64,000 nt of DNA from Macrostomum lignano. Taxonomy: Eukaryota. This document shows, one piece after another, positions 12,501-48,200 of this stretch (its first letter is position 1; each line of letters opens with the position of its first letter). Below the pieces are notes generated by a model, which saw only the letters and a program-made list of their open reading frames with translations, made no database searches and was not told where the DNA came from. The stretch is taken from contig NIVC01000109.1 in the NCBI GenBank assembly GCA_002269645.1, positions 418,016-482,015 on the forward strand, in the 5' to 3' direction. A program made the translations under genes and the position numbers.

Positions 12501-15500
12501 ATCGCTGATGGGGGGCTGCTGCTCATGATTGGCGTCAGAGTCATCGCTGGACTCATCGCTGATGGGGAGCTGCTGCTCATGATTGGCGTCAGAGTCATCG
12601 CTGATAGGGGGCTGCTGCTCATCATTGGCGGCGGCGTCATCTCTAGACTGCTGCCTCATTTTCTTTTTAGATTCCCTGAGTCGCTTTTTTGCCGCTTTCT
12701 GTTCGTCTGTGGCATCACGGAAGCTGAAGGTATTGAGGAGTAATGTTGCATCATGATTAAAAAATAAATTATATTACGCAACAATCTAAGTGCCGACTTT
12801 TATACAGGAATGCTATGGACACCTAAGTTACCCAACTACCAACTTATTTAACCGTAGTCGATAAAAAAACAAAGTAACAACTCGAAATTAAGTTCAACAT
12901 TCATCATTTTTATAATTTAATGAAATTCGGAGGAACACGGATAAACAACGGATCAACACAACTCAAGATTCAGTTCGACTTTCATCGTTTTTTAAATGGG
13001 CGGCAACTGGGGAGAGCACTTAGAACTTCTGGCAGGCAGTAGTCGGTACACCAGTTGCCAATGACTGCGCTGCTGCACAAGTGAGACGGTCACAATACAT
13101 GTAGATGATCAGCTTTCGTCACAAAAACGGCCAACATCTGCTTTGCAACGCTGCGCTCTCACTGCAGCTTCAATGATGGGGCGCCTCCAACTGGTGTCCA
13201 CTGGGCCGACTGCTGCTTGGTCTCTGGGTCAAAACTGTAGATCCAGGATTCGTCACCACTGACGATTTCCCAGACCGAGTTTGAGCGGCCATCATCGAAT
13301 CTGTAGAGCATGGCATGGCACCAAGCCACCCGAGCCTCCTTTTGCTCCTCCGTCAGGTGATGAGGCACCCAGCGTGCAGAAATCTTGCTCAGGTTGAGCC
13401 TTGAGTGCAGGAATCGTGCGGATGGCTGCCGATGAGATGCCGCTTCTGCCTCTATCTGGGCCACAGTTGCCCTGGCATCATCCTCAATCATGGCCCGAAT
13501 AGCAGCAACATTCTCATCCCTTGCTTCTGCAGTCATCATCATCCAGACTCCGTCGGCCATGTCGAAATTCAGCAAACCACTCAAAAACTGTGGACCTGGA
13601 AGGTGCTTCATTACCAAAGTTCCAAAGCTTAAAGTTCCTCAAAGCTATTCTGATTGCCTTAAACAGCAGCGCAGGCTTTATAGAGTGAATTTGTCTGAAA
13701 TTGCACAACTGTAATCACAAGATAATTGTACATAATATCTGCTATGCCGAATTGTATACATCTCCTTCCCAATTTGTGCCTCCGAAAGCTTATTGCATAC
13801 CCCTCGTAGCCTACTGAAGGATTAGGGATAGCCTACTGAAGGATCAGGGATAGCCTACTGAAGGATCAGGGGTAGCCTACTGAAGGATCGGGGTAGCCTA
13901 CTGAAGGATCGGGGTAGCCTACTGAAGGATCGGGGTAGCCTACTGAAGGATCGGGGTAGCCTACTGAAGGATCGGGGTAGCCTACTGAAGGATCGGGGTA
14001 GCCTACTGAAGGATCAGGGATAGCCTACTGAAGGATCAGGGGTAGCCTACTGAAGGATCGGGGTAGCCTACTGAAGGATCGGGGGTAGCCTACTGAAGGA
14101 TCGGGGTAGCCTACTGAAGGATCGGGGGTAGCCTACTGAAGGATCAGGGATAGCCTACTGAAGGATCAGGGGTAGCCTACTGAAGGATCAGGGATAGCCT
14201 ACTGAAGGATCGGGGGTAGCCTACTGAAGGATCAGGGATAGCCTACTGAAGGATCGGGGGTAGCCTACTGAAGGATCAGGGATAGCCTACTGAAGGATCG
14301 GGGGTAGCCTACTGAAGGATCAGGGGTAGCCTACTGAAGGATCAGAGATAGCCTACTGAAGGATCGGGGGTAGCCTACTGAAGGATCGGGGGTAGCCTAC
14401 TGAAGGATCAGGGGTAGCCTACTGAAGGATTGGGGTAGCCTACTGAAGGATCAGGGGTAGCCTACTGAAGGATCAGGATAGCCTACTGAAGGATCGGGGT
14501 AGCCTACTGAAGGATCGGGGTAGCCTACTGAAGGATCAGGGTAGCCTACTAAAAGATCGGGGGTAGCCTACTGAAGGATCGGGGTAGCCTACTGAAGGAT
14601 CGGGGGTAGCCTACTGAAGGATCAGGGATAGCCTACTGAAGGATCGGGGTAGCCTACTGAAGGATCGGGGGTAGCCTACTAAAGGATCAGGGTAGCCTAC
14701 TGAAGGATCAGGGGTAGCCTACTGAAGGATCGGGGTAGCCTACTGAAGGATCGGGGTAGCCTACTGAAGGATCGGGGATAGCCTACTGAAGGATCAGGGG
14801 TAGCCTACTGAAGGATTGGGGTAGCCTACTGAAGGATCAGGGATAGCCTACTGAAGGATCGTGGGTAGCCTACTGAAGGATCGGGGGTAGCCTACTAAAG
14901 GATCAGGGGTAGCCTACTGAAGGATCAGGGGTAGCCTACTGAAGGATCAGGGGTAGCCTACTGAAGGATCGGGGTAGCCTACTGAAGGATCGGGGGTAGC
15001 GTACTGAAGGATCAGGATAGCCTACTGAAGGATCGGGGTAGCCTACTGAAGGATCAGGGATAGCCTACTGAAGGATCGGGGGTAGCCTACTGAAGGATCG
15101 GGGTAGCCTACTGAAGGATCGGGGTAGCCTACTGAAGGATCGGGGTAGCCTACTGAAGGATCGGGGTAGCCTACTGAAGGATCGGGGTAGCCTACTAAAG
15201 GATCGGGGTAGCCTACTAAAGGATCGGGGTAGCCTACTAAAGGTCTACGGAAAGATCAGTGAGCATTGGAAGTCTGACCCGATTCCCCTCGTCGCCACTG
15301 CACCGCAGGCGCGGACATGCCCGTCGTAATCACGGTGCTGAACTCCTACTCTGGCTGGGCCCTGTGCGCCGAAGGCTTCATGCTGGACAACAACCTGATG
15401 ACCGTGGTTGGCGCCCTCATCGGGTCCAGCGGTGCCATCCTGTCCTACATCATGTGCAAAGCTATGAACCGCAGCCTGCCCAATGTCATCTTCGGCGGCT

Positions 15501-16767
15501 ACGGCACTAGCTCTTATGCCGGCGGCAAAGCTATGGAGATCACCGGTACTCATACTGAGGTGAGGCGATTCTTGTCTTGTCACAGAGTTCTTTGACCTCG
15601 AATGACCCGCTTTGATCTCAAATTACCCACTTTGACCTTAAATCACCCATTTTGACCTTAAATGACCCCTTTGACTTCAAAGAGCCCAGTGGCTTAAGAT
15701 GACATACTTTGACCTCAAATGACCCACTTTGACCTCTGATAAGCCATTTTGACCTTAAATCTAGTTTGAACTCAAATGATCTATTTGACTTCAAAGAACC
15801 CAGTGTGGCTTTAAATGACATACTTTGACCTCAAATGACCCACATTGACCCCAAATGACCCAATTTGACCTCAAAAAACCAACCTTGACCTTTTGACTCA
15901 ATTTCATCTCAAATAGCCAATCTTGACTTGAGCCTCAAAGTTACTTGTTACTTGGTAACAAAGTACGACTATGCTGGTATAATCGATCTTTTGTAACCCG
16001 AATGACCCTAAATGACCCTTATTATATTATCGCCGGTTGTCATCAGGTTAACGTCGACCAAGTGGCCGACTGGGCGGTGAACGCTCGCAACGTGATCATC
16101 ACTCCCGGCTACGGCCTGTGCGTGGCCAAGGCCCAGTACCCCCTGGCCGAGCTGGTCACCCTGCTGCGCAAGAAAGGCGTCAACGTTCGCTTTGGAATCC
16201 ACCCGGTGGCCGGCCGCATGCCCGGACAGCTCAACGTGCTGCTGGCCGAGGCCGGCGTCCCCTACGACATTGTGCTGGAGATGGACGAGATCAATCACGA
16301 CTTCCCGGAGACAGACCTGGTACTGGTCATCGGCGCCAACGACACGGTGAACTCAGCCGCTGAGGAGGATCCCAACAGCATCATTGCGGGTGAGCCCTGA
16401 CTGTCAGTGCATTAATTTGCACTTCGTGGCACTCGCAAGTGTACAGTGTAGGAATGTAAAATATGTACACTGTAGGATATACAATTTTGTGTACAGCGTA
16501 GGAACGTAAAAAGTGTTGGCGACCATAAGTCAGTACAATGCCTAACCTGCACCCCCATTAACCCGCCACCCACACTCAGGCATGCCGGTGCTTCGCGTGT
16601 GGAACTCCAAGCAGGTGGTGGTCGTCAAGCGCACCCTTGGCGTTGGCTACGCCGCCGTGGACAACCCGATTTTCTTCAAGGAGAACACCGGCATGCTGCT
16701 CGGCGACGCCAAGAAGATGTGCGACGGCCTGCTGTCCAAGGTCAAGGAGTACTATGGCGACAACTGA
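272..16767 (+). CDS. NNT: Mitochondrial NAD(P) transhydrogenase, gene model join(272-502,2573-2912,3378-3574,4275-4628,5225-5551,6697-7138,7696-8244,15309-15559,16047-16389,16580-16767), 3222 nt, about 1073 aa
   Basis: All junctions are GT-AG with matching phases. Motifs: [25 protein letters not shown] (NAD binding), [70 protein letters not shown]. Order dI-dII-dIII with an N-terminal presequence-like segment. Confidence 0.96.
895..2440. repeat. 25-bp minisatellite filling NNT intron 1, about 60 copies
   Basis: Unit CCGGCCTTCAAAACTCCATTAAGAA with variants; degenerate at both edges. Confidence 0.93.
2573..2912 (+). CDS. NNT: NNT coding exon 2
   Basis: [16 protein letters not shown]...ALSSMANIA; ag at 2571-2572, gtgag at 2913. 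Confidence 0.95.
2945..3350. repeat. 22-24 bp minisatellite in NNT intron 2
   Basis: Unit CTGAGAATCGCCCCCAATTCTAC. Confidence 0.88.
3378..3574 (+). CDS. NNT: NNT coding exon 3 (Rossmann GxGxxG)
   Basis: [40 protein letters not shown]...DTRAAVKEQ; not shown in this frame in the ORF track. Confidence 0.95.
3650..4240. repeat. 21-bp minisatellite in NNT intron 3
   Basis: Unit GATTTGTACAGTTTGAATGGG and variants. Confidence 0.92.
4275..4628 (+). CDS. NNT: NNT coding exon 4
   Basis: [11 protein letters not shown]...[12 protein letters not shown]...DLPSRLPTQ; phase 0/0. Confidence 0.95.
4645..5060. repeat. 21-bp minisatellite in NNT intron 4
   Basis: Unit GCTCAGAATCCTAATCCCTGT. Confidence 0.92.
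5225..5551 (+). CDS. NNT: NNT coding exon 5 (end of dI, Pro/Ala linker, first TM helix)
   Basis: [13 protein letters not shown]...WPPPPPPAP...FSGM; donor gtgagt at 5552. Confidence 0.93.
5585..6575. repeat. 18/19-bp minisatellite in NNT intron 5
   Basis: Interspersed units GTCCCTGAAGTTATCAGT and GTCCTCTGAAGTTTTTAGT. Confidence 0.93.
6697..7138 (+). CDS. NNT: NNT coding exon 6 (dII)
   Basis: [35 protein letters not shown]...SSQKTCRL. Confidence 0.95.
7155..7630. repeat. Degenerate minisatellite of about 22 bp in NNT intron 6, with an internal duplication of about 121 bp
   Basis: Recurrent TTGATTGACAGGTAGGGAATGG; about 7362-7482 is repeated at about 7483-7603. Confidence 0.75.
7696..8244 (+). 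CDS. NNT: NNT coding exon 7 (dII)
   Basis: NALGMIGV...[18 protein letters not shown]...[17 protein letters not shown]...TAAIG. Confidence 0.95.
8975..10190. repeat. Highly homogeneous 69-bp tandem array, about 17.5 copies
   Basis: Period 69; only the first unit is visibly diverged. Confidence 0.95.
10500..12745 (-). mobile_element. Degenerate EnSpm/CACTA-like (Transposase_21-type) transposase remnant
   Basis: Minus-strand fragments [23 protein letters not shown] (about 11600-11525) and [23 protein letters not shown] (11211-11519) match TDG...WP and DxPARA...NGxxGCxxC motifs; several frameshifts; termini not found. Confidence 0.65.
12175..12645 (-). repeat. 54-bp tandem repeat, about 8 copies, encoding acidic [18 protein letters not shown] at the N-terminal side of the transposase remnant
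   Basis: Period 54; variants GTCAGA and GTCGGA alternate. Confidence 0.9.
13807..15240. repeat. 20/21-bp minisatellite, about 70 copies, in NNT intron 7, directly next to the mariner TIR
   Basis: Unit TAGCCTACTGAAGGATCGGGG; the first TA is the mariner target site. Confidence 0.94.
15309..15559 (+). CDS. NNT: NNT coding exon 8
   Basis: [23 protein letters not shown]...[12 protein letters not shown]...GTHTE. Confidence 0.96.
15590..16020. repeat. Degenerate TTTGACCTCAAATGACCC repeat in NNT intron 8
   Basis: Recurrent motif of about 19 bp, highly diverged. Confidence 0.7.
16047..16389 (+). CDS. NNT: NNT coding exon 9 (dIII, NADP binding)
   Basis: [14 protein letters not shown]...[23 protein letters not shown]...GANDTVN. 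Confidence 0.96.
16580..16767 (+). CDS. NNT: NNT final coding exon
   Basis: [29 protein letters not shown]...GDAKK; TGA at 16765-16767. Confidence 0.96.
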
Positions 16768-20825: not shown

Positions 20826-23800
20826 GTGAGCGAGCTGTTAAAAGTGCATGGAATCCTTCCTACCTTTCTTTATCTACCCTACCTACCCTGTCTACCCTGC
20901 CTACCCTACCTATCCAACCTACCCTGCCTACCCTACCTATCCAACCTACCCTGCCTACCCTACCTATCCAACCTACCCTGCCTACCCTACCTATTCAGCC
21001 TACCCTGCCTACCCTACCTATCCAACCTACCCTGCTACCCTACCTATTAAGCCTACCCTGCCTACCCTACCTATCCAACCTACCCTGCTACCCTACCTAT
21101 TAAGCCTACCCTGCCTACCCTACCTATCCAACCTACCCTGCCTACCCTACCTATTCAGCCTACCTGCCTACCTATCCAACCCACCCTGCCTACCCTACCT
21201 GGTCTACCTACTCTACCCTGACCACTCTATCTACTCTGTCCACTCTGCCTACCTATGCTCGACCTACCCTGCCTATCCTATACCTACATGTACTGACCGT
21301 ATAACAACCAACCTACAGTATTTAGGTCTACTCAACATACTCAGTCTACTTACACTTGCAAGCCCACCCAACACAATATACCCACCAAAGCAGTCTAACA
21401 AAACTCCGAACACATTTTAAAAGCATTTCCAAAATTTTCCAGGGATTTTCCAGTACCGAATCCGCGGGCCCCCTCAAACCATCCATCCAATGTTCTATAT
21501 TTAGCATCAATTGTTTTGAGACCACATAGTACAGTGCGCATAAAATTCTCACCACTTGACTCAGAGTTTGTCTGCCCCAGAGCATTGGCCTCTGTGCACT
21601 CTTTTAAGTGCAGCAGAGTTTCGTCACAAGCCTCAGCGAGGTGGACGGCGGCCCACGCCTAAGTTGTGTGAACAAGAAGCTGAAGAAATACAGTAGACTG
21701 AGAAACTTGCTTTCTTTCAAAAGTGCAAAACGTTGCTTTTGAGTAGATAACAGTGGTTGATAAATTTAATTTTTGCATCTTAGAGAACTCTAAGGGGTTA
21801 ACAACCATGAAAATATTACAATGAAGCGGCTCGCGTGCGGCGACATGAAGACCGCTTGTCCTTTAATAAAGTGCTGCGGCTGGGCCTGTTACGGCTCTAG
21901 TATATTTGGGCCATAGACAGTTTGAGCAGGAAGTGGCTGGCTCTGTCAAAAGTACATGTGTCCGCTACGACAAAACGTTTTTAAAGTTTTTTTACAAATT
22001 ATTTTATGCTTGTACAATTGCTATCAAATAGACATTTTCTGTCCAAAAAGCCATCACAACCTACCCAACCTACTCAACCAATCCAACCTACTCAACCAAT
22101 CCAACCTACTCAACCAATCCAACCTACTCAACCAATCCAACCTACTCAACCAATCCAACCTACTCAACCAATCCAACCTACTCAACCAATCCAACCTACT
22201 CAACCAATCCAACCTACTCAACCAATCCAACCTACTCAACCAATCCAACCTACTCAACCAATCCAACCTACTCAACCAATCCAACCTACTCAACCAATCC
22301 AACCTACTCAACCTACTCAACCAATCCAACCTACTCAACCAATTCAACCTACTCAATCAATCCATCCTACTCAATCAACCCAACCTACCCAACCTTCATA
22401 AGCTACCCAACCTACCCAACATACCCAACCTACTTTATCTAGCCAACCCTACCAAATCTTCCTAAACCTACCCAATCTACCCAATCTACCCAATATACCC
22501 AATCTGCTCAGCCTACCCAACCTACCCAACTTACTCAAACCTACCCTACCTACCAAACCTACTCGAACCTACCCAACCAACCCAACCTACCCAACCTGCC
22601 CAACAAATCCAACCTACCCTACCTACCAAACCTACCCAACCAACCCAACCTACCCAACCTGCCCAACAAATCCAACCTACCCTACCTACCCTACCTACCC
22701 AACCTACCCAACCTACCCAACCGCAGGCTCGATCGGCTCGGCCACCATCGGCTGCGTGTTCTTCTTCTCCTTCCTCGGCAGCATCGTGATGGACCGGGTC
22801 GGCCTCCGCCGCTGCGCCTTCGCCGGCGGCCTCATCGCCGTTTGCAGCTTCATGGCGAGCTCCTTCGTGCCGCCAGAGAACGCCACCGTCCTGTTCTTCA
22901 CCCACAGCTGCCTGTTCGGCTTCGGCGCAGCCCTGGTGTACACCCCCAGCCTGGTGATCCTCGGGCACCATTTCGACAAGCGGCTGGGCCTGGCGAACGG
23001 CATCGTCACCCTGGGCAGCGGCGTCTTCTCCGTGGTGCTGTCCCGATCGCTCAAGCCGCTGCTCCTCGATCGCATCGGGGTGCACAACACCTTCAGAGTG
23101 TACTGCGGCATGGCGGCCTTCATGCTGGTGTACTCATTCACCTGGAAACCGCTGAGACCTGTCAGGCACGCAGAGCTGGATCACTACCTGTCGCAGGCGT
23201 CCCTCACCGAGCGCTTGGCCGGTGTGCGAGCTTTTCTTACCAAGTTTCTCAACGTCAGCATCTGGCAAAATCGCGGCTTCTTGATCTGGATTGTCGGCTG
23301 CCCGTTCGCCCTGTTTGGCTACTTTGTGCCCTTCATGTTTCTGGTGAGCTCCGCGGCTTTTCCGTGTCTCCCCTCCCCTCTGTGCCCTTCATGTTTCTGG
23401 TGAGCCCCGCGGCTTTTCCGTGTCTCCCCTCCCCTCTGTGCCCTTCATGTTTCTGGTGAGCCCCGCGGCTTTTCCGTGTCTCCCCTCCCCTCTGTGCCCT
23501 TCATGTTTCTGGTGAGCCCTGCGGCTTTTCCGTGTCTCCCCTCCCCTCTGTGCCCTTCATGTTTCTGGTGAGCCCTGCGGCTTTTCCGTGTCTCCGACTC
23601 TACCTCCTCTCCCTATCTCCCTCTCTCCCTCTGCTTCTCCCTCTGTCTCCCTCCCTCCTTCCCTCTGCCTCTCCCTCTGTCTCCCTCCCTCTCTCTCCCT
23701 CTACCTCTCCCTCTATCTCCCTCCCTCTCTCCCCTCTCTCTTACTCTATCTCTCTTCGACGTTTTTTTTATTAAAAGGAAGTCTGCTACGCTCAGACAGA

Positions 23801-28111: not shown

Positions 28112-28912
28112 AATCTTGTAAATGAAAATTAATTTGTTACAAAAGCGTCCTTCCGTATCCTACAGTTCGTGTCCATGAAAATGATGACTGCTTTATCAAC
28201 ATTTATCCTTCTGCTTTATAATTTCCCCTTCATTTTGTGAGGCTCCCCAGCCTGTGACGATTAATTTAAGAGTAAAAAAATTGACAAAATAAGAACTAAC
28301 AGCTGCTGTTTCCTCGGCCTTGATTCATCACGTGACCCCGCTATGCATACACTGAGCTCGTATCGATTCGCTTGCGAGTGCAACTTCTGAAGTGAATTTA
28401 TAGTTTAACACTCAGTTACTCATGTTTTAACTTATTTATATGTATTTATTAGTGTCATTCATCTTTGGCTTAATTAATTTTGCTTCTATAGCAAAATGCA
28501 CGTGCTTCTCAAGCATATGAACAATAAATGTGCATTGTACACAACATTGGATCTTAAAATTAATTTCTACTATTTTGAGACGTTGGGTCCTCTTACTAAA
28601 AGTAGTCCTTATCGTACATGTATGTATATAAGCATTCTGGAGGGCACGTTTGATATATGATCGACTAGGGCCCAATGGGACAGTTCCAAAAAGTAAACCA
28701 AGTGCCAAGTAATGGATCAACTATAAAGGAGATATTAGCTCGTGAAACAAAATTTACGAGTATCTTACTGCTGCTAGGGTTCGAGGTCGAGCTAGGAGAC
28801 TTTATCAAATGAAAATTAACGATATGCTGCCCAATATCCTTCACGTAGCTGAGAATTAGAAGTTTTGCGAGTACGTACATGTAAAGCAGAAAAATGGACC
28901 AAATAAAGCGAG

Positions 28913-30075
28913 CCGTAAAGACGGTCTCTGACTATTTTTACCCTGGCTGCCTCTCTGGTAGCTTGTCTAAGGGTTGTGCGCAATCCGATTGGCCTGGCTT
29001 CGGCTAGCCCAATAACTAAGGGTCCGCCCCGGAGGGGCTGTGCCCATCTAAAAATAACCCTATTCTTTTTCGTACGTTCGTTCCAATAGAATTTCGGCCC
29101 TCGGCCTTGGTTTAGGGGGGGGGGGGTGCCCGGAGTGAGTAGGTACTCTGGACTGCAGTGTGGCTACTAGGACGGGACTGAGCCCCCCCGGTCGTACCCG
29201 CCCTGCAGGAAAGAAAATTACCAATTCACAAAGGTGCACGGTAGACCCAGTAGACTGCCAGCACTGAGGCTGAGCCCCGGGTACAGGTTTGAGGAGGCCT
29301 GTGTGGGTTCAGGTGCTCCTCCAGTTATGTTTTAGTCCCATTACAGTATTGGTTTTATCTAATCCCGGCCTTATGTAGCCGTCCAATCTCTCGGAGTAAT
29401 GAGCTCTGCCCACTGCCCGGTCCACCCTGCTCTGTCCTTGGGTCCATCTACTGGCTCCTGCTGACGGTCCCTGCCAGCGTGTCTCTGGCTCTCATCCTGA
29501 CAGTGGATTGGTGTCCTGGGAAGGATTTTCGTCCCGTACCGGGGACAACCGGCTGAGTCTGATGTCCTCTTGCCCCTGGTGCCTCTTCCCAGGGGCAAGA
29601 GGACATCATACCCCTTGGCCTGGCCCCCAATATTGAGCTTGGGTTGGCAGCAATAGAGGTGTTCCGAGTCCGCCTAGAGTCTCCCCCTCGGATACAAGCC
29701 TTCCAGACTCGCTCCAATAGTTAGCCCTTTCCAAGACTTCTGGGTTTCCCCGCTCCTGGACGGCTTTTTAGCAATATATCCAATTCTGTTTTTCGCGCAC
29801 TCCCGAGGACTTGTCTGCTGGGGGGGGGGTAGCCTGGGTGGACTCGGTCCTAGCACCGTCCCTGATTCCACTGTTGGTTTGGCGGTGTCTTGTACCGTAG
29901 GCTTGGGTCAATTTCGCCCACCCGCGCTTTAAGCCGGGTCCAATCTTCATCTCTCTCGGGGTATCTCAGGCTCTAAAAACAGCTAATGCTGTGCCCCTGG
30001 TAGTGCCCCTCGCGGCAGAGCCCTTCCATGTGGCTGATCCGCGGTCCCCCTTATAGGACCCTTTCGTTTAACAAC
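28913..30075 (+). mobile_element. Non-coding structured SINE-like retroelement, copy 1
   Basis: Colinear homolog of 46624-47454 with the same 5' start CCGTAAAGACGG, AAC-repeat tail, imperfect TSD AAAGCGAG/AAAGCTAG. Confidence 0.75.
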
Positions 30076-30566
30076 AAAGCTAGCTAAAGGGCACCGCAGT
30101 GGAAATCCATTTAATGGCGCCGGTGAAGAATGGAAGTTTAAAAACTATTGAATGGATATAACAGTTAAATTAAAAGACTTGCAGCTGAAAGTAGATGTAA
30201 TATTGTAATATATTATAATATTATGATATTACAATATAATATAACATTACAAAATACATTGTAAAATAAATTGACGGAGTAGATCTTCGGTTTTTATTGT
30301 CGTTATTGTTGACTCGTGTGAGTTCGCGGGGCGTCATGGCGTTAGCAATCCATTTATTCCTCACTGGCTTTCTTATAATATACGTAAGTAATTATATCTG
30401 ACTGAAAATATAAGAAAACCCAACGCCTATACTATACTATACTATACCTATACTATGAGTACATGTAGAACGTACGGGAAACCTCGTTACGGGAAAGTCT
30501 CGTTTCTTAGAAAATTTTAGAAGACAGCTTATTCCGGAAACAATTCAATTGTACATGCGCTGGGCC

Positions 30567-40349: not shown

Positions 40350-43300
40350 GTAAGTAGATGCTACTATTTAGGGCCAGACAGGGTATTGATTAAAAAGATG
40401 TAGAGGATTGTGTACTGTAGGGGAAGGATAGAATGATTGAAGACTGGCGAACTCTGGGGATTTGTTGGGGAGTAATTGGAGAACTGACTCGTACTCGCTG
40501 GTCTTGCCTTGCGAGCTTGTATTATTAGTTTTTGTTACTTTTGCTTTCAGGAAGCAGCTCAAAGACACGTCACCTACGCCGCCACCAGATGCTAGCAAAG
40601 ACGCCAGTGCTAGCACCAAGCCTAAGGAAGAGGCGTCACGCCCGTCCAGTGTCGATTCAGAAGCTGCTAAAGCACCGGTTGCTCCAGACTCCGAAGTCGC
40701 AGCACCGGTTGCTACTGACTCATCAAATGCCGCAGCATCGGTTGCTACTGACTCATCAAATGCCGCAGCACCGGTTGCTATTGACTCATCAAATGCCGCA
40801 GCATCGGTTGCTACTGACTCATCAAATGCCGCAGCACCGGTTGCTATTGACTCATCAAATGCCGCAGCAACGGTTGCTATTGACTCATCAAATGCCGCAG
40901 CATCGGTTGCTACTGACTCATCAAATGCCGCAGCACCGGTTGCTATTGACTCATCAAATGCCGCAGCAACGGTTGCTACTGACTCATCAAATGCCGCAGC
41001 AACGGTTGCTATTGACTCATCAAATGCCGCAGCAACGGTTGCTATTGACTCATCAAATGCCGCAGCAACGGTTGCTATTGACTCATCAAATGTCGCAGCA
41101 TCGGTTGCTATTGACTCATCAAATGCCGCAGCACCGGTTGCTATTGACTCATCAAGTGCCGCAGCAACGGTTGCTACTGACTCATCAAATGCCGCAGCAA
41201 CGGTTGCTATTGACTCATCAAATGCCGCAGCACCGGTTGCACCTGAATCAGACAATACCGCAGATCCAAATCCAGCCAAGGCGGTCAATTCAGACACAGC
41301 AAAGTCAGATACGTCAGGCGCTTTAAAGGATGAAGCAGACGATTCAATTCCGAATGCAGTTACAGAAGCGAGCGGTGATGCTTCCGCTGAATCCTCTAGC
41401 AACTATTCTGGTAAATCTGACACAGTCAATAGTCAGAAGCTAACTGCGCTGCAAAAAGGTAGTGGATTGTCGTTCTTTAAATTTATTGGCAAATTATTTT
41501 ATGCGATAGTGAATGCGATCATTAAATGATCACTTGCTCAGAGTTAGTAAACAAAATCATTTCCAGCCAGTCTGTTTGGTAAATCAAATTCTTATACATC
41601 GGCGGGACGCGCGAGACTGTTTTATAAAGCGTGTCATATAGTAAATAATAGTATAAAATTTTTAGTATAAGTAGTAGTATAATATTGAATAATATTATAT
41701 TATTAAGTTATTTTTAAACTTAACTATTAGATTTAAACTTCATAACATTCGATTAAAACATGTTTCCTAACAACTTAGGTAAAACTGATTGAAAAATATG
41801 CCCATTCGATATAGGCGCCACCAGTAACCAGAAGACCAAAGGCAGTGACGCTAAATCTAGCGCAGCCACTGGGCGCTCCACAGACTCTAGTATACAGCAA
41901 AGCAAAATCACTGCAGCCACGGATGCAAAGGATATTGAAGGATCTGAAAATTCAGGTTTAACTGCAACCACTGAAATTGACGACGTCAAAGTGAAATCAG
42001 TAAACGTGGGAAAGGACTCGAAAAAGACTGCAGCACCTGACGAAGTCAAAGCAGGTGATGCCGACTCGGAAGTTATAAATCTGGTAAGTAAGTTATAACT
42101 AAGCTAAAAAATCCTCGTTTCTTTGAAGACGATGTACTCGTATTTAAGGGATTGACGTATGATTTTTTGTAGTGCTAATCTCGTTATTCGGATTTTATAG
42201 AAAAATGCGTAAGGAACCGTCTAAAAGTTCACTTAATAGGTTTTGTTAAGGCTCCGCCAGGCCAGAAAAAGTCTGGCCCAAGACAGACCCGGAAATTTCG
42301 ACTCTAGCCGGGACGGGCTTTGCGAAATCGGGACAGTTAATGTATAACTGTATATGATCACACATAAATATTTATACAATTACTTTTAGAGTGAATAGAC
42401 TAGGTCTAGCCTGATAAAATAAAAAATACATTTAAAAGCTCACAAAAATGACTTGTCCCGAATTCTCAGCTATTTCGGGCCTCTGAGGCCCCGGACAGAC
42501 CCTAAATTAAAGTTTTAGAAGCCTATAGTAGAAATGTGCCTTTTAAACCCTTAAAACCTTGAAGAGTTCGCTTTAGCACACTAGAGAGAGAGAGAAGAGA
42601 GGTCACGGCGTGTTTAAAAAATATTTAATTTAGTATGGGCTACCGGTTTCGAGCCTCTGGGCTCTTCGTCAGGCCAAAAATCAGTGTTTCATGCAGTGCA
42701 AGTTGGTCTTTTAAGTATTAGTTTTCTCAGTCTAATAAAATCGCTGAGCTGCTGTACATATGAGGGGTGTACATTTAAACTGGGTTCATTCTAGCTCTAA
42801 CTTGTCCCAGAGGCTTTCAACCGGTCAGTTTAAGCGACGGTATATTTGGTATATTAAAAAATTGTTTTTTCGAAGTACGATTAAATAAAATGCGGTATTG
42901 AGGGTGGTAGCATAAAAATCGATATTTGTGCGTACAGTCAATCAGTTTGAATAAAATACACGACAAAGTGAATAAATATTGTAGTTCTATAGGTAAGAAG
43001 AGCGCATTGGTTAAAACGATTCAATGGTTTCCTGGCTGGGACTTAAACTTATTGGGAGCCAGGAGGCTCTGTAAATTTCGTTGCCGTGTAAATGCGGGCA
43101 GTATGCGGGAGCCTGGTTTATTTTGTAGCTTCTCAAAGTTTTTAGCAATCTCGTTGGCAAGCCAGACCGTAGATGGGTGAAAAGGAAGGACCAGAGGGAT
43201 GGGTCGGAGAAGATGATTGTCAACCCTGATGTTCGTACCTGGCGGTTTGTCAGTCCCCAGTTTTTAATCCAAATTTCTTCCCTTAGTTCGATTTTGTTGT

Positions 43301-45174
43301 TATTAAGAACTTGTTCGATAGCAATGGAGACAAAGTTTGCAATCGAGTGATTGGGGGTGAGAAAGTGCTCTGATCCCGAAGTAACGACTCTCCTGTTAAT
43401 ATTTGACCTGTGCTGGTTCATTCTATCTCTCATTGTTCTTCTAGTCATCCCTACATAGAGGATTTTCCCAGGGTGGCACTGGTTGCAGGAGATGCCATAG
43501 ATGATGCTCTTGGAGCCACAGGACAGGCTCTGAGAGATAAAAAAACCGGAAGCCGGTTTCAGCCCCTGGGCGGAGAGAGCAGGCGGTGAGTGGGTGCAGC
43601 ATTTGCAGCGGGATGACCCACAGGGATGGAACCCTTTGGGAAGCAGACCCAGATTGGTCGTTGGTCCCGCAGTCCAGTTCATGAGTTTGAGGACCTACTT
43701 TTTGCAGTTTCTAAGAAAAATCTTCGAGTAGCCTAATTGCTTGAGTTCCGATTTTAAAGAATTGAAAGCATCGTTGAAAGACTTGTAGTCATCACAGATA
43801 CGGGCGTACCGAAGGACTTGGGATTTTACTACCCCCTTGAAGGTGTGTGACGGATGGAAGGACTGTCGGTGCAACAATCTATGGGTGTCTGTTTCTTTTG
43901 AAAACAGTTGTGTTGTGAAGCAGTTTTCAGCTTTCTTGATGGTCATGTCAAGGAAACTGACCTCAGTTGATGAGGAGCTGACGGTGAGTTTGATGTTGGG
44001 GTTGATTGAATTTAGGTGTCGAACAAATTCTGTCAGCTTCAGTCGGGTGGTTCCAGTGAATGAATATATCATCTATGTACCTAAAATAAATGTTCGGCTT
44101 ATAAAGAGCAGTTCTCAGGGCAGTTTCCTCCCAGAGGCTCATGAACAGACAGGCATAGCTGGGCGCAAATATGCGCCCCATGGCTGTACCTCTAAGTTGT
44201 AGGAAAATCATTTTGTTAAATTCAAAGTCATTCCTGTACAAACACAATTCCAGTAGTTTTATTAACTCAGCATCCGGTCTAATGGGATCCGGGTATCGGT
44301 TAAAGAATTCCTGGATCGCTGCAATGCCCTGGTTTATAGGAATCATGGAGTACAGACTCTGGACATCACAAGTTGCCAGAGTCGAACCTTCCGTGCAGCT
44401 TTTATCCATAAGGTGTGCCTTGAAAATCATACGAGCCCTTAACGAAAGTGGGTTGCACTTGGGCAATCGGTTTTAGAAAGAAGTCTATGTACTTTTCTGG
44501 CCCAATTGCTTCAGAGCTGCATCCGCTAACAATAGGTCTGCCTGCTGGGACCCGAAAGGGGATCAGCCAGGTGGCCGGGTCCTTGTGAATTTTTGGGAGC
44601 AGGTAGAAATGCCGGGGACGGAAGTTCTCTCCGGGACAAAGAAAAGAAAACTGTTTCTTAGATATGAACTTTCTGTTACATAAATCGAGGAAGATCCCCC
44701 TGATAAGTTCCGCAGTCTCGTGTTGCAGTGGCTGGTCCAGCTGTTGATAGGCATTAGTGTCAAGCAATTGGTTGTAGGCTGCGAATTCGTAATCCTTGGG
44801 GTGCATGATGACCACTGCGTTACCTTTGTCCGCCTTTTTTATAAGGACGGAGCTGTTTCGCTTGAGCCCCTGAATCGCCCTGGTCTCTGGTGCCTCTAGG
44901 TTGCCTTTGATCTGTACCGTTGTCAAATTCTCTACCAGTTTTTGGTTCTCAAGCACAAACAAGTTGCACTCATCCCTTCTAAGTCTGCGGGGGACCTCCT
45001 TCACTGATTTCCCGGTGAAAGGGGGCGGGCTGGTATTGGCGAGACCCCTCTTTTTGAAAAAGTCTCTAGAAAAGTTTACGATGAAATTCCGACCCTAAAT
45101 TAAAGTTTTAGAAGCCTATAGTAGAAATGTGCCTTTTAAACCCTTAAAACCTTGAAGAGTTCGCTTTAGCACAC

Positions 45175-45256
<82 letters not shown>

Positions 45257-48200
45257 GAAACAGAAACAGAAAGAGAGAGAGGGGCAGAGAGAAAATAACG
45301 TCCAGTGCTAAATGCACGAACTCTTACTTCCAGACCGCAAGTCTGAGAACAGAATTTAGTGATCTGCTCTTCTTATCGGGCAGATTCCTCACGTCTCCTC
45401 AAGTTGTTTTCCCCTTGGTTCGATTTGTCGATTCTGAAGTCGGCCAGAACAACTTTACTGAAGGTATCAATTCGATTCGTCGGCATTAAAGTATTCCTCG
45501 AGCTCCAAACTCAATATCATAATGCACCTCTATAGTAATAAGGTTTTCCAGAAAGGGCGCCTAGAAATAACAAGTCGCATGCCCCTATCTGCTACTGTAG
45601 AGTACCAAAAGTCAATAAACGTCTAAGAGTATCGGAATCGGTCCAATCTCCCCAATCCCTTAGGTATAGGGAGGCCTTTAATTCAAAATTCAATAGAAAT
45701 CACGTGAACGACAACCGCCGATAATAACTCAGCTCGTAAGACGTCTCAGAAGGCTCACAAAACAGCACAGATTTCACTCAGAGATTTAGTCCCGCTCTTC
45801 TCGATAATTTCCAAGTCCTTTAGAACTGCTCCGAGTCTGCAGTTTTTCGGGCTCGCAGAGCGTTTGTATTTATACACGATATTTTGCGAAAACCAGTTTA
45901 TTCCACTTTAGCTAAATGGGTGCAGGAGTCATATATAGTGTAGTAGGGCGTAATTTAGGAGCGGAATCATATTTGCTTTTACACTACTAACAGTATTTTC
46001 CAGAGTAGCGGAAATATCGGTAATTAGGTATTTTCATTTGCATTAGGGTTTTGCGGGATTCATTATTAGTAAAGGGCAGTTGGGCTCTCTGGGTAAGCAT
46101 ACTCGGTTGCAGTCTTACGACTTAAAAATTTCCAAGAGGGAATTCAAGATAAGGGAAATTAGGGGATTAGGGAATAGGAATTAATATCGTACTAGATGAG
46201 TCTTGCCCAAGCACATTCTAGGGGAAACAACCGGGAAATTCAATGTAAAACAACTTTTGTGTATGTTGACAATTTTATTCATTAATATTTGCTTGAAAAC
46301 TAAGATTTATATTGGTGCCCTGTCTCACTTCTTTAATTGCTAAATACTAGGATTAGGGAGTATCAGAAAACCTGGTGGCAGCAACCTAACAAAATCAAAT
46401 CAGTTAAATCCACTAAGAACAATAGCATAGTAACGTGATGATTCAGTTTTAATTTTACTGCGCGTGTTTGCGTTACTCTACTTGCAATAGCATTCAAAGC
46501 ATTTTAGTAATGAAATATACTCTATACCTCTATGCGATATGCAAACGATGGGTTATAGAACGGATATAATCTATAAGAATTTGTCTCGGTAATTTTTTTT
46601 TCAATTTTATTTGCAGTCAATAACCGTAAAGACGGCCTGACTGTTTTTACACTGGCTGCTTCTCTGGCGGCATTTCTCGGGTTGTGCGCAATCCAATTAG
46701 CCTATAGTTCTATAGCCCAATCATTAAGTGTCCTTGCCGGAGGCAATGTGCACATCTAAAAATAACCCTATTTTTTCCAATTATTTCGTCCCTCCGCCTT
46801 GGTTTGGGAGGGGGGTGTACCTGGAGTGAGTTGAAATTCTGGACTGCAGTGTGGGGTGTGGCTAGATCGGGACTTGAGCCCCCGGTTGCACCCACCCTGC
46901 AGGAAAGACGACCATTCACAAAGGTGTACGGTAGAGCCCAGTTGATGCCAGCCCTGAGGCTGAGCCCCAGGTTTAGGGTTCAGGTGCTCCTCCCATTTTG
47001 TTTTATCCCTTTGTGTTTTTAGCTTTGTGTTTTTGTCCCTGGCCTCGAAGCCGCCCAATCTTTGGAGTTATGAGCTCTGCCCTTCCCTGCCTGGTCCATC
47101 CTGCTTTCCTTGGTCCATCTGCTGGCTCCTCTGGTAGTCTCCCTGCTTTTTGTCTCGGCTCTCATCACTGACAGTGGATTGGAGTCCTGGGGTAGATGTT
47201 CGTCCCGAATCGGGGAATACCAGCTGAGTCCGGGTTCCTCTTGCCCCTTGTGCTCCTCTCCAACCCCTTGGCCTGGCCCTTATTGAGCTGGATAGCAAAA
47301 ATAAGGTTTCTTCCCTGGCCATGACGTCAGGTTCCAATCTGGGCTGCTCGGGCTTTATGCCCCTGGTAGATAAGCCCCTGTATTCTAGCGGCAGAGCCCT
47401 TCCCTGGGCTGATCCGCGGGAGCCCCCTAGGCTACCCACCTCGTTTCACAACAACAATAAGCTGATTAAATCGAATTTTCAGGAACCCTGGCTAGAAGCA
47501 GAAGAGTTCCTCAAACTTGATAACGACTTAAGAAAACGCTATGTGAGTAAATCATAATCTATACAATTTATATTTATATGTGGTAATCAATTAGCGGTTT
47601 TCAAATGCTTTGTTTTCATGTGTGCGTATTTTATTGTATTCACCTACTATACCGTGGATTTTAGACGCTTTTTCAATTCCGGCTTTACATCGCGGACATA
47701 GTTAAACTTTTTATGGATGAAGTTTCTAATTCAAAAAAAGGCGTTTCCGACAATTCGCAGTTTATGCAAACGCTTTTGGCTTCAGTCCTTAACGCTAAAT
47801 GTGATGTAACGGTTTCACTTGTGATTTCAAACAGAAATCTGAGCAAATCTTTTTCCGTTCAGCATAAAGTCAATTCTGTAAAAGGTTTTTATACTCTACC
47901 AACTTGGAGGATATTTTTTCGAACAGATCATATCGAAAAGTTTGCCTATAACTATAGTTTGTTTGCCAAAACTCCGACACTGCAGCTTGCAAACTTTAGA
48001 CAGCTTCAGGATTCGCTTAAAAAGCTTGGTCCAGCCTTTCTTTCTCCTGTGGAGCGAACTCTAAATAATTGCAGCAAATTAACTGATACAATCATCAAGT
48101 GCTGCTCAAAAAAATTCAGTGCACCCACTGACAACATAATTAGTGAGCTGCAAACTCGCACTCTCAGCAAAGACCGACTTGTGTGTTTCGACGCACTGCT

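What the first reader, a model, noticed from the sequence alone, without database searches (positions are those of the whole stretch)
28913..30075. Unrecognised large structured-RNA retroelement: two diverged copies with extensive base-pair covariation and a candidate pseudoknot
Seen: 28913-30075 and 46624-47454 are colinear non-coding copies, roughly 70% alike by eye, with the same first nucleotides (hairpin CCGT-AAAG-ACGG), AAC tails and different TSDs. Stems change sequence but keep pairing: CTGGC-TTCG-GCTAG (28994-29007) vs CTATA-GTTC-TATAG; GCCCC-GGA-GGGGC vs TTGCC-GGA-GGCAA; GCTGC/GTAGC vs GCTGC/GCGGC around a conserved loop; CCGGAGT/ACTCTGG vs CTGGAGT/ATTCTGG; and remodelled 3' hairpins. 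A long-range pair ACCCT(28940)/AGGGT(29019) becomes ACACT(46649)/AGTGT(46727) and crosses the GGGTT/AACCC and GTGCGCA/TGTGCAC stems, forming a pseudoknot. The bulge ATCTAAAAAT is invariant. I see no 5' tRNA A/B boxes and could not fit hammerhead, HDV, twister, pistol or hatchet consensus. Inference: a mobile structured RNA under selection for folding (new ribozyme, IRES-like or RT-recruiting domain), mobilised by a LINE.
Basis: partly seen in the sequence, partly recalled or inferred. Interest (0 to 1): 0.85.

Follow-up and report, generated by a model that had tools for sequence, protein, structure and literature searches.

The report
Flatworm retroposon with spliced-leader head
Two diverged copies of a non-coding, LINE-dependent retroposon of the flatworm Macrostomum start with the first 17-21 bases of the host's spliced-leader RNA and keep a few 5' hairpins base-paired despite sequence change; this is a real and apparently unannotated repeat, but an ordinary kind of element rather than a new class of large structured RNA.

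Summary
The two copies are real: A is 28913-30075 and B is 46624-47454, both on the + strand. They are 74% alike, have no ORF over 123 aa, different target-site duplications and AAC-repeat tails.

Compensatory base-pair changes are also real, but only in the first ~150 nt. Six pairs changed on both sides against 0.8 expected (P<2e-4). Most of the rest of the 0.8-1.2 kb body shows no structure signal. The proposed pseudoknot ties with a nested alternative.

No Rfam family, tRNA or HDV-like fold fits.

The window is from Macrostomum, and the element's first 17 nt are identical to the first 17 nt of the M. lignano spliced leader (20 of 21). Partial leaders on LINE/LTR repeats are already reported in flatworms.

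Best reading: a non-autonomous non-LTR retroposon with three parts.
- A leader-derived 5' end.
- A small conserved 5' hairpin module.
- A 3' stem-loop with an (AAC)n tail, used by an unseen partner LINE.

No further copies could be retrieved, so R-scape-grade covariation testing was not possible. Ribozyme function is unsupported.

The parts
28913..30075 (+). Copy A of the retroposon (1163 nt), full length
   Evidence: blastn and nhmmer against copy B. No ORF over 89 aa. GC 56% against ~39% in the flanks.
46624..47454 (+). Copy B of the retroposon (831 nt). It lacks about 330 nt of A's internal region.
   Evidence: No ORF over 123 aa.
28905..28912 (.). 5' target-site duplication of A (AAAGCGAG). 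Its partner is AAAGCTAG at 30076-30083.
   Evidence: Direct reading; 7 of 8 bases match.
30076..30083 (.). 3' target-site duplication of A (AAAGCTAG)
46618..46623 (.). 5' target-site duplication of B (CAATAA). Its partner is at 47455-47460.
   Evidence: Direct reading. The 3' copy abuts the AAC tail, so its exact length (5-6 bp) is uncertain.
47455..47460 (.). 3' target-site duplication of B (CAATAA)
28913..28933 (+). Spliced-leader-derived head of A: CCGTAAAGACGGTCTCTGACT
   Evidence: Nt 1-17 are identical to nt 1-17 of the M. lignano SL, CCGTAAAGACGGTCTCTTACTG... (PMC5173321), and 20 of 21 match. The chance of 17/17 in a fixed register is about 6e-11.
46624..46643 (+). Spliced-leader-derived head of B: CCGTAAAGACGG--CCTGACTG
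   Evidence: The first 12 nt are identical to the SL; 19 of 22 match with 2 gaps.
28913..29062 (+). 5' hairpin module of A (element nt 1-150). It comprises a hairpin at nt 3-29, a hairpin at nt 34-50, a closing stem at 59-65/142-148, a hairpin at 82-95 with a UUCG loop, and a hairpin at 108-133.
   Evidence: MFE fold, RNAalifold and pair counts. z = -2.5 on the + strand and +0.7 on the - strand.
46624..46771 (+). 5' hairpin module of B
   Evidence: z = -1.7 on the + strand and +0.35 on the - strand.
28994..29007 (+). Covarying hairpin CTGGC-TTCG-GCTAG. In B it is CTATA-GTTC-TATAG at 46702-46715.
   Evidence: 2 double changes plus one G.U to A-U change (pairs 84-93, 85-92, 86-91).
29020..29045 (+). 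Covarying hairpin at element nt 108-133, with core GCCCC-GGA-GGGGC. In B it lies at 46728-46753 with core TTGCC-GGA-GGCAA.
   Evidence: 4 double changes under the nested model (pairs 109-132, 114-126, 115-125, 116-124).
29557..29611 (+). A-specific perfect 19-bp hairpin. Its right arm (about 22 nt) is an inverted duplication of the left arm and is absent from B.
   Evidence: It is the only source of the weak miRNA-like Rfam hits.
30012..30042 (+). Invariant 3' stem-loop GCGG-CAG-AGCCC...GGCT-GAT-CCGC. In B it lies at 47388-47417.
   Evidence: RNAalifold. All pairs are identical in both copies, so covariation gives no evidence here.
30043..30075 (+). Terminal hairpin GGTCC-CCCTTATA-GGACC, then CTTTCGTTT and the (AAC)2 tail. 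In B the hairpin is rebuilt as (GG)GAGCC-CCCTA-GGCTA(CC), followed by CGTTTCAC(AAC)2.

Best explanation
These are two independent insertions of one family of non-coding, non-autonomous non-LTR retroposons in a Macrostomum flatworm genome. 'SINE-like' describes the layout, but Pol III is not the polymerase.

The sense RNA (+ strand) has four parts:
1. A head copied from the first 17-21 nt of the host spliced-leader (SL) RNA.
2. About 130 nt of hairpins kept paired by compensatory substitutions.
3. An indel-rich 0.5-0.9 kb body with no structure or coding signal.
4. A ~110-nt 3' module: an invariant stem-loop, a second rebuilt hairpin, then CGTTT[A/C]AC(AAC)n.

Likely life cycle:
- An ancestral transcript acquired the leader. 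This happened by SL trans-splicing, or less likely by RT template switching onto SL RNA or by read-through from an SL gene.
- The leader was then reverse-transcribed into the genome, so it became a heritable 5' end.
- Master copies are transcribed by Pol II from nt 1.
- A partner LINE's reverse transcriptase recognises the 3' stem-loop and AAC repeats. It copies the RNA by target-primed reverse transcription, which makes the 5-8-bp duplications.
- The 5' head and hairpins act in cis, on 5'-end definition, stability or RNP assembly. Lineages of master copies therefore kept the pairing while the sequence drifted 20-26%.

Shown: the copies, TSDs, tails, absence of ORFs, SL identity, compensated pairs, and absence of any Rfam, tRNA or HDV fit.

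Inferred: the polymerase, the partner LINE, how the leader was acquired, and what the hairpins do.
For: COPIES AND ENDS
- establish the copies, and the TSDs and tails can be read directly.
- Non-coding. A search with all six-frame pieces against 5.8e9 proteins found nothing.

HOST
- The NNT exon at 15927-16397 is 96% identical to the Macrostomum lignano protein.

SL HEAD
- The published SL is CCGTAAAGACGGTCTCTTACTGCGAAGACTCAATTTATTGCATG (PMC5173321; PMC8629364).
- Element A nt 1-17 are identical to it and 20 of 21 match.
- The head lies inside the TSDs, so it is part of the mobile unit.
- Precedent: 597 loci with partial leaders in LINE/LTR repeats of parasitic flatworms, interpreted as integrated trans-spliced retrotransposon transcripts (PMC12582326). 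TE transcripts also carry SL in Hydra (PMC12220107).

POL III UNLIKELY
- There is a T5 run at nt 23-27 in A (nt 21-25 in B), with further T runs downstream, and no tRNA.

STRUCTURE UNDER CONSTRAINT
- 6 double-compensated pairs against 0.82 expected, and 5 broken against 13.8.
- 98.8% of cells are paired, against 40-46% when partners are slid by 1-3 columns.
- Paired columns change as often as unpaired ones (17/80 against 16/74).
- 10 G.U cells and z<0 only on the + strand point to sense-strand RNA.

3' MODULE
- The stem-loop is invariant and is followed by a rebuilt hairpin.
Against: - Only two copies exist in the data, so covariation rests on about 3 clustered mutational events and cannot be tested with R-scape.
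- No partner LINE is in the window. The only RT is a Penelope-like element with unrelated ends.
- SL similarity stops at nt 21. The rest of the 44-nt leader is not recognisably present (P = 0.09-0.6). A simple 'trans-spliced then integrated' origin therefore needs later deletion or divergence, shared by both copies.
- Nothing shows that copies are transcribed from nt 1. No promoter was identified.
- With B's MFE as reference the structure signal is weaker.
Confidence: 0.7

Rival explanations
1. The hairpins are not under selection. The 'compensatory' changes are by-products of template-switch (inverted-copy) mutations during replication or reverse transcription. Such events rewrite both arms of a hairpin in one step. 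On this view the element is just a decaying non-autonomous LINE derivative.
For: - Copy A carries a fresh example: a 22-nt inverted duplication, absent from B, that creates a perfect 19-bp hairpin at 29557-29611.
- The double changes are clustered: 8 of 9 consecutive positions at nt 84-92, and 3 adjacent pairs at 114-116/124-126.
- Two of the three changes in the second hairpin are double transversions with no wobble intermediate.
Against: - Template switching makes perfect Watson-Crick arms, yet the kept structure holds 10 G.U cells.
- Three one-sided wobble changes occur in a third hairpin (nt 34-50), and they fit only the + strand.
- Folding z-scores are negative only on the + strand.
- Intact TSDs at 26% divergence imply that the copies come from diverged master lineages rather than from post-insertion decay.
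Confidence: 0.18
2. One reading: the 5' domain is a new catalytic or otherwise autonomous RNA, either a self-cleaving ribozyme that defines the 5' end or a pseudoknotted RT-recruiting domain.
For: - The two diverged copies share an identical 5' terminus.
- Three sites (nt 30, 109, 132) change together, which would fit alternative or pseudoknotted pairings.
- The 10-nt ATCTAAAAAT bulge is invariant.
- The invariant loop CUCUCUGG is complementary to the invariant CCGGAGGG (output).
- There is no Rfam match, so any such RNA would be new.
Against: - The shared 5' terminus is explained by the spliced leader.
- No HDV-like nested double pseudoknot with P1 at nt +1 is common to both copies.
- No hammerhead, hatchet, twister or pistol hit appears even at E<=10.
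- The pseudoknot ties with a nested hairpin.
- Two sequences cannot show invariance.
Confidence: 0.07
3. The family descends from a LINE that lives inside SL RNA genes, site-specific like NeSL or CRE/SLACS, inserted near SL nt 21 and transcribed from the SL gene promoter. On this view the two copies are off-target insertions of that co-transcript or of its deletion derivative.
For: - Only the first ~21 nt of the leader are present, with a fixed junction shared by both copies. That is what read-through from an interrupted SL gene would give.
- SL exons are a known LINE target (PMC4640811).
Against: - Both copies sit in non-SL DNA with ordinary TSDs.
- No SL gene or RLE-type LINE is in the window.
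- NeSL is reported only from nematodes.
Confidence: 0.1
4. These are processed pseudogenes of a trans-spliced host non-coding or coding gene, or a solo LTR.
For: The 5' end is leader-like and the copies are flanked by TSDs.
Against: - There is no poly(A) tail; the copies end in AAC repeats after a conserved stem-loop.
- The leader is partial, and its deviation is shared by both copies.
- 26% divergence with compensations implies evolving master copies.
- The termini are not TG...CA, and there are no inverted termini.
Confidence: 0.04

Closest known systems
Partial spliced-leader sequences on LINE/LTR repeats in flatworm genomes (PMC12582326, 2025)
   Same: Same phylum. A partial leader sits at a retroelement locus and no other SL-RNA feature is present. 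The authors interpret these loci as integration of trans-spliced retrotransposon transcripts.
   Different: That report covers parasitic flatworms and describes loci discarded from an SL-gene screen. It does not describe a defined non-coding family, a conserved junction, or structured RNA next to the leader.
SINEU: SINE-like retroposons with U1/U2 snRNA-derived heads (Kojima 2015, PMC4494074)
   Same: The head comes from a Pol II-transcribed spliceosomal small RNA. Oligo-T runs inside argue against Pol III. The elements are non-coding, LINE-mobilised and flanked by TSDs, and how they are transcribed is unresolved.
   Different: SINEU elements are under 500 bp, occur in crocodilians, and carry long snRNA segments. 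Here only ~21 nt of SL are recognisable and the element is 0.8-1.2 kb.
Non-autonomous LINE derivatives with a conserved 5' signature: RIME/ingi, NARTc/L1Tc and the Pr77 hallmark (PMC3185411, PMC4748587)
   Same: These are non-coding partners of LINEs that share a short conserved, structured 5' end, which defines the RNA 5' terminus.
   Different: Pr77 is an HDV-like ribozyme and promoter. No HDV-like fold was found here, and no partner LINE is known.
Stringent-type LINE/SINE 3' recognition (for example eel UnaL2/UnaSINE1), with a 3' stem-loop plus short tandem-repeat tail. This comparison rests on my own knowledge of the literature.
   Same: A conserved 3' stem-loop is followed by a short tandem-repeat tail instead of poly(A).
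   Different: The partner and the binding are not tested here, and the repeat unit (AAC) differs.
Sadhu (Arabidopsis) and SVA: longer non-coding retroposons that are neither LINE nor SINE (as summarised in PMC4494074)
   Same: About 0.9-2 kb, non-coding, with no recognisable Pol III promoter, and LINE-dependent.
   Different: Unrelated sequence and host. They have no leader-derived head.

Membership tests
Non-autonomous non-LTR (LINE-dependent) retroposon | Dispersed copies flanked by target-site duplications of differing sequence | tested here: met
   A has AAAGCGAG and AAAGCTAG; B has CAATAA and CAATAA. The flanks are otherwise unrelated.
Non-autonomous non-LTR (LINE-dependent) retroposon | 3' end is poly(A) or a short tandem repeat, and the element has no coding capacity | tested here: met
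   (AAC)2 tails (a partial third AAC unit in B). The longest ORFs are 89 and 123 aa. No protein homologues.
Non-autonomous non-LTR (LINE-dependent) retroposon | 3' tail shared with an autonomous partner LINE | not testable with these tools
   No LINE RT is in the window; the only RT is a Penelope-like element. The host genome is not in the searchable collections.
Classical SINE (Pol III; tRNA, 7SL or 5S head) | Head derived from tRNA, 7SL or 5S with internal A/B or 5S promoter boxes | tested here: not met
   ARAGORN found 0 genes. Rfam gave no hit at E<=10 in the head. A T5 run at nt 23-27 would terminate Pol III.
Small-RNA-headed retroposon (SINEU-like) / SL-tagged retroelement | 5' end derived from a spliceosomal small RNA, lying inside the TSDs | tested here: met
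   17/17 and 20/21 identity to M. lignano SL nt 1-21, in register with the element's first base.
Small-RNA-headed retroposon (SINEU-like) / SL-tagged retroelement | Similarity extends through the small RNA (full SL exon, GU donor, Sm-like site) | tested here: inconclusive
   Beyond nt 21 the similarity is not significant (P = 0.09-0.6).
HDV-like self-cleaving ribozyme (as at the 5' ends of R2, RTE and L1Tc) | Nested double pseudoknot (P1-P2-P3-P1.1-P4) with P1 starting at the cleavage site, that is element nt +1 | tested here: not met
   A permissive descriptor search found no candidate with P1 at nt +1 shared by A and B. No Rfam HDV-type hit.
Hammerhead, hatchet, twister or pistol ribozymes | Match to the family covariance model | tested here: not met
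   No hit at E<=10 on either copy, either strand.
SL RNA gene | About 109 nt, full leader followed by a GTAAG donor, Sm-like site between hairpins, tandem or multicopy gene context | tested here: not met
   The element is 0.8-1.2 kb and TSD-flanked, and only 21 nt are leader-like. The rest of the leader is absent from the window. A has GGTAGC at nt 45-50, but B has GGCGGC.
Solo LTR / LTR retrotransposon | TG...CA termini, short inverted ends, 4-6-bp TSD, association with gag-pol | tested here: not met
   The termini are CCGT...AAC with no inverted ends, and no gag or pol lies nearby.
Structured RNA under selection (covariation-supported) | Statistically significant covariation in a many-sequence alignment (R-scape standard) | not testable with these tools
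   Only 2 sequences are available. Permutation and slide controls on the pair are positive for nt 1-152 only.

The most novel reading that the evidence does not exclude
The leader-like head plus the adjacent covarying hairpins form a working mimic of the SL snRNA 5' region. That mimic would give the retroposon an SL-type transcription start, cap or Sm-type RNP identity. Alternatively the domain is a new self-processing RNA. Either way this would be the first retroposon family that uses spliced-leader RNA as its 'SINE head', with alternative pairings (nt 109 with nt 30 or nt 132) acting as a switch.
Probability: 0.12. Interest if true: 0.75.

Novelty: new member of a known kind. Interest (0 to 1): 0.42.

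Why it matters
If the reading holds, Macrostomum carries an unannotated non-coding retroposon family that has made a piece of the host spliced leader its permanent 5' end.

- It would be a concrete, dissectable example of how trans-splicing, or SL RNA itself, feeds sequence into mobile elements. So far this has been reported only as a by-product in parasitic flatworms.
- It extends the small list of retroposons headed by Pol II small RNAs (SINEU).
- Practically, such copies are false positives in SL-gene and trans-splicing screens.
- They may also matter for annotating the repeat-rich genome of this regeneration model.

The structured 5' module is a reasonable target for a covariation study once genomic copies are collected. 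On present evidence it is a small hairpin module, not a new large RNA.

Tried and rejected
MORE COPIES (all attempts failed)
- Exact-pattern scans of metagenome, viral and prokaryote-genome collections gave only chance 18-21-mers or nothing.
- A search of 5.8e9 proteins with all six-frame pieces of both copies, hoping for spurious ORFs called in other copies, found nothing.
- An exact look-up of a window ORF was not on record.
- A contig carrying a 91%-identical NNT exon (L013) is another animal and lacks the element.
- nhmmer and a 154-nt covariance model found only the two copies in the window.

KNOWN RNA FAMILIES
- Rfam at gathering threshold on the whole window, and E<=10 on both copies. 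Only junk miRNA-like hits to A's perfect hairpin appeared.
- ARAGORN found nothing.
- The HDV-like descriptor search gave only permissive chance combinations. Those starting near nt 1 use flanking bases that differ between the copies.

OTHER IDEAS REJECTED
- Coding remnant: indels are not multiples of 3 and there are no protein hits.
- Mobilisation by the neighbouring Penelope-like element: there is no shared sequence, and the insertion style differs.
- Extension of the SL match over the whole leader by a 'loop deletion' alignment is plausible by eye (it keeps the GGUC/GACU stem) but not significant.
- The M. lignano SL RNA gene sequence could not be found in the held papers.
Full report
WHAT IS THERE

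The window holds two + strand copies of one non-coding repeat: A at 28913-30075 (1163 nt) and B at 46624-47454 (831 nt).
- blastn aligns A nt 1-670 with B nt 1-630 at 74.3% identity, and also aligns the last ~70 nt. By alignment the shared 3' part is about 110 nt.
- A carries about 330 extra internal nucleotides.
- Self-BLAST, nhmmer and a covariance model find no third copy in the window.
- Neither copy has an ORF longer than 89 aa (A) or 123 aa (B).
- Indels are not multiples of three.
- A search of 5.8e9 proteins with every six-frame piece of both copies found nothing.
- Both copies are GC-rich (54-56%) in ~39% GC surroundings.

ENDS

Both copies begin at the same base, CCGTAAAGACGG.
- A is flanked by AAAGCGAG (28905-28912) and AAAGCTAG (30076-30083).
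- B is flanked by CAATAA (46618-46623 and 47455-47460).
- A ends ...CGTTTAACAAC and B ends ...CGTTTCACAACAA(C).
- The flanks are otherwise unrelated, so these are independent insertions and not a segmental duplication.
- There are no TG...CA termini and no inverted termini.

These are the marks of target-primed reverse transcription by a LINE that uses a short tandem-repeat tail rather than poly(A).

HOST

Exons of NAD(P) transhydrogenase lie between ~2525 and 16617. The exon at 15927-16397 is 96% identical to the Macrostomum lignano protein. One unnamed ENA protein is 91% identical (its contig, L013, proved to be another animal), and hits from other named animals are mostly ~75-87% identical. 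The window is therefore from Macrostomum, either M. lignano itself or a close relative or homeologue.

THE 5' TERMINUS IS THE SPLICED LEADER

The published M. lignano spliced leader is CCGTAAAGACGGTCTCTTACTGCGAAGACTCAATTTATTGCATG (PMC5173321). The SL RNA gene is 109 bp with a GTAAG donor and an Sm-like site (PMC8629364).
- Copy A nt 1-17 are identical to SL nt 1-17, and 20 of 21 match. Copy B keeps the first 12 nt and 19 of 22 with two gaps.
- In a fixed register, 17/17 has a chance of about 6e-11.
- Beyond nt 21 the similarity is not significant (P = 0.09-0.6). The rest of the leader occurs nowhere in the window.
- The head lies inside the TSDs, so it belongs to the mobile unit. Its deviations from the canonical leader (G18, loss of the 3' half) are shared by A and B, so they are inherited and not re-acquired at each generation.

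This has precedent:
- In parasitic flatworms, 597 candidate SL loci were discarded because they sat in LINE/LTR repeats and had only partial leader sequences. The authors interpreted them as integrated copies of trans-spliced retrotransposon transcripts (PMC12582326).
- In Hydra about 30% of TE Iso-Seq reads carry an SL (PMC12220107).
- SINEU elements carry U1/U2 snRNA heads (PMC4494074).
- A T5 run at nt 23-27 in A (nt 21-25 in B), with further T runs downstream, argues against Pol III. ARAGORN finds no tRNA.

STRUCTURE

Thermodynamically, few windows stand out.
- Nt 1-150 on the + strand stand out (z = -2.5 for A, -1.7 for B). The - strand there gives z>0.
- The only other windows that stand out are A's private perfect hairpin and B's 3' end.
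- The first 154 alignment columns contain only three gap columns, so the alignment is not in doubt.

I folded A alone, mapped its pairs onto B and compared the result with 5000 permutations of B's letters among columns of like A-base.
- Columns 1-152 have 6 pairs changed on both sides and still paired, against 0.82 expected.
- They have 5 broken pairs against 13.8 expected. No permutation reached either value.
- With B as reference the signal is weaker (P = 0.007 for the combined score).
- In the windows tested between columns 153 and 690 there is no consistent signal. One window, columns 301-450 with A as reference, is nominally P about 0.01-0.02, uncorrected and absent with B as reference.

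For an explicit model the numbers are:
- 98.8% of cells pair, against 40-46% when partners are slid by 1-3 columns.
- Paired columns change as often as unpaired ones (17/80 against 16/74).
- Ten cells are G.U, which fits only the + strand.

The model's helices are nt 3-29, 34-50, 59-65/142-148, 76-101 and 108-133. The covariation sits in:
- the tip of hairpin 82-95 (CTGGC-TTCG-GCTAG becomes CTATA-GTTC-TATAG);
- the base of hairpin 114-126 (GCCCC-GGA-GGGGC becomes TTGCC-GGA-GGCAA);
- one further pair, discussed next.

THE PSEUDOKNOT

It can also pair with C132, which extends the 114-126 hairpin and is the RNAalifold and A-MFE solution.
- Both models score 6 double changes and one unpaired cell.
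- Their energies are within ~2 kcal/mol once the 5-bp pseudoknot helix is added.
- A's MFE takes the nested form.

Two sequences cannot decide. Alternative pairing is possible but unproven.

KNOWN RNA CLASSES
- Rfam gives nothing at gathering threshold in the whole window.
- It gives nothing in the 5' domain at E<=10.
- A permissive HDV-like descriptor finds no fold with P1 at nt +1 common to both copies.
- Since the 5' end is accounted for by the leader, a 5'-processing ribozyme is not needed.

THE 3' MODULE

An invariant stem-loop, GCGG-CAG-AGCCC...GGCT-GAT-CCGC, lies at 30012-30042 in A and 47388-47417 in B. It is followed by a hairpin whose base (GG/CC) is kept while the inside is rebuilt with indels, and then by CGTTT[A/C]AC(AAC)n. 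This is the layout used by stringent LINE/SINE pairs (established knowledge, not tested here). It shows no covariation because it does not vary.

A CAUTION ON 'COMPENSATORY' CHANGE

A has a 22-nt insertion that is the reverse complement of the preceding 19 nt. It makes a perfect hairpin at 29557-29611 that B lacks. Template-switch mutations therefore occur in this family and can rewrite both arms of a hairpin at once. The clustered changes at nt 84-92 could in principle arise the same way. Three things argue that RNA pairing is nevertheless under constraint in the master lineages:
- the G.U content;
- the one-sided wobble changes in hairpin 34-50;
- the strand asymmetry.

I put that at about two in three.

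VERDICT

The copies, ends and hairpin compensations are real. 'Large' and 'extensive' are not, and the pseudoknot is unresolved.

It is a LINE-dependent non-coding retroposon with a small conserved 5' RNA module. It is not a demonstrated new ribozyme or large structured RNA.

The most informative feature is the spliced-leader-derived 5' end, which places it among leader- or snRNA-tagged retroelements already noted in flatworms and crocodilians. No partner LINE is in the window; the only reverse transcriptase there belongs to a Penelope-like element with unrelated ends.

All attempts to obtain further copies failed because the host genome is not in the searchable collections. The decisive covariation test must therefore be done on the Macrostomum assemblies.

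Noticed in passing
window 42498-45195, minus strand: A Penelope-like retroelement. One ORF has an RVT_1 domain (43963-44466) and another a GIY-YIG domain (43011-43682), with frame breaks between them. A 105-bp direct repeat (42498-42601 = 45091-45195, 99%) looks like a pLTR. The element is embedded in a (CT)n microsatellite. By eye a minimal hammerhead core, CUGACGA-GAGCC/GGCUC-GAAAC-CGGUA, lies at about 42637-42676 on the minus strand. Rfam did not report it at E<=1.
   Followed up: partly
window 1-35000: A chain of about 25 unrelated minisatellite arrays (periods 9-236 bp, up to 67 copies). Those up to ~17.3 kb lie mostly in the introns of an NAD(P) transhydrogenase gene (exons ~2525-16617); the rest lie downstream, around an MFS-transporter ORF at 22402-23400.
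   Followed up: partly
window 51142-62396, + strand: A giant, almost intron-free ORF pair (2758 aa plus 992 aa) with AAA_5 and AAA domains. The best hits are RNF213-like proteins at only ~40% identity.
   Followed up: partly
window 29557-29611: Copy A has a 22-nt inverted duplication, absent from B, that makes a perfect 19-bp hairpin. This is a template-switch-type mutation, and it causes the only weak Rfam hits (miRNA-like, mraW).
   Followed up: yes
element nt 39-46 and 117-124 (A 28951-28958 and 29029-29036; B about 46661-46667 and 46737-46743): The invariant loop CUCUCUGG of the second hairpin is complementary to the invariant CCGGAGGG at the top of the GGA hairpin, in both copies. This is a possible kissing or alternative pairing. 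There is no variation with which to test it (output).
   Followed up: no
element nt ~230-660 (A 29140-29575; B 46840-47255): Many 13-20-nt blocks are identical between copies that are otherwise ~70% alike, for example TCTGGACTGCAGTGTGG, CCCTGCAGGAAAGA, GGGTTCAGGTGCTCCTCC and CTGACAGTGGATTGG. There is no consistent structure signal and no coding signal. Their function is unknown.
   Followed up: partly
window 47480-47545: About 30 nt downstream of copy B, TTTTCAG|G matches the M. lignano trans-splice acceptor motif [T/C]TNCAG. It is followed ~55 nt later by ATG|GTGAGT, which looks like a donor. The 683-aa ORF at 47713-49764 has no Pfam domain. Copy B may lie in an outron or intergenic spacer.
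   Followed up: no
L013 (ENA ERZ25070786 ctg122443l): This contig carries a compact NNT gene ~70-75% identical at the DNA level to the window's exons. It has none of the minisatellite introns and no copy of the element, so it probably comes from a different animal.
   Followed up: partly
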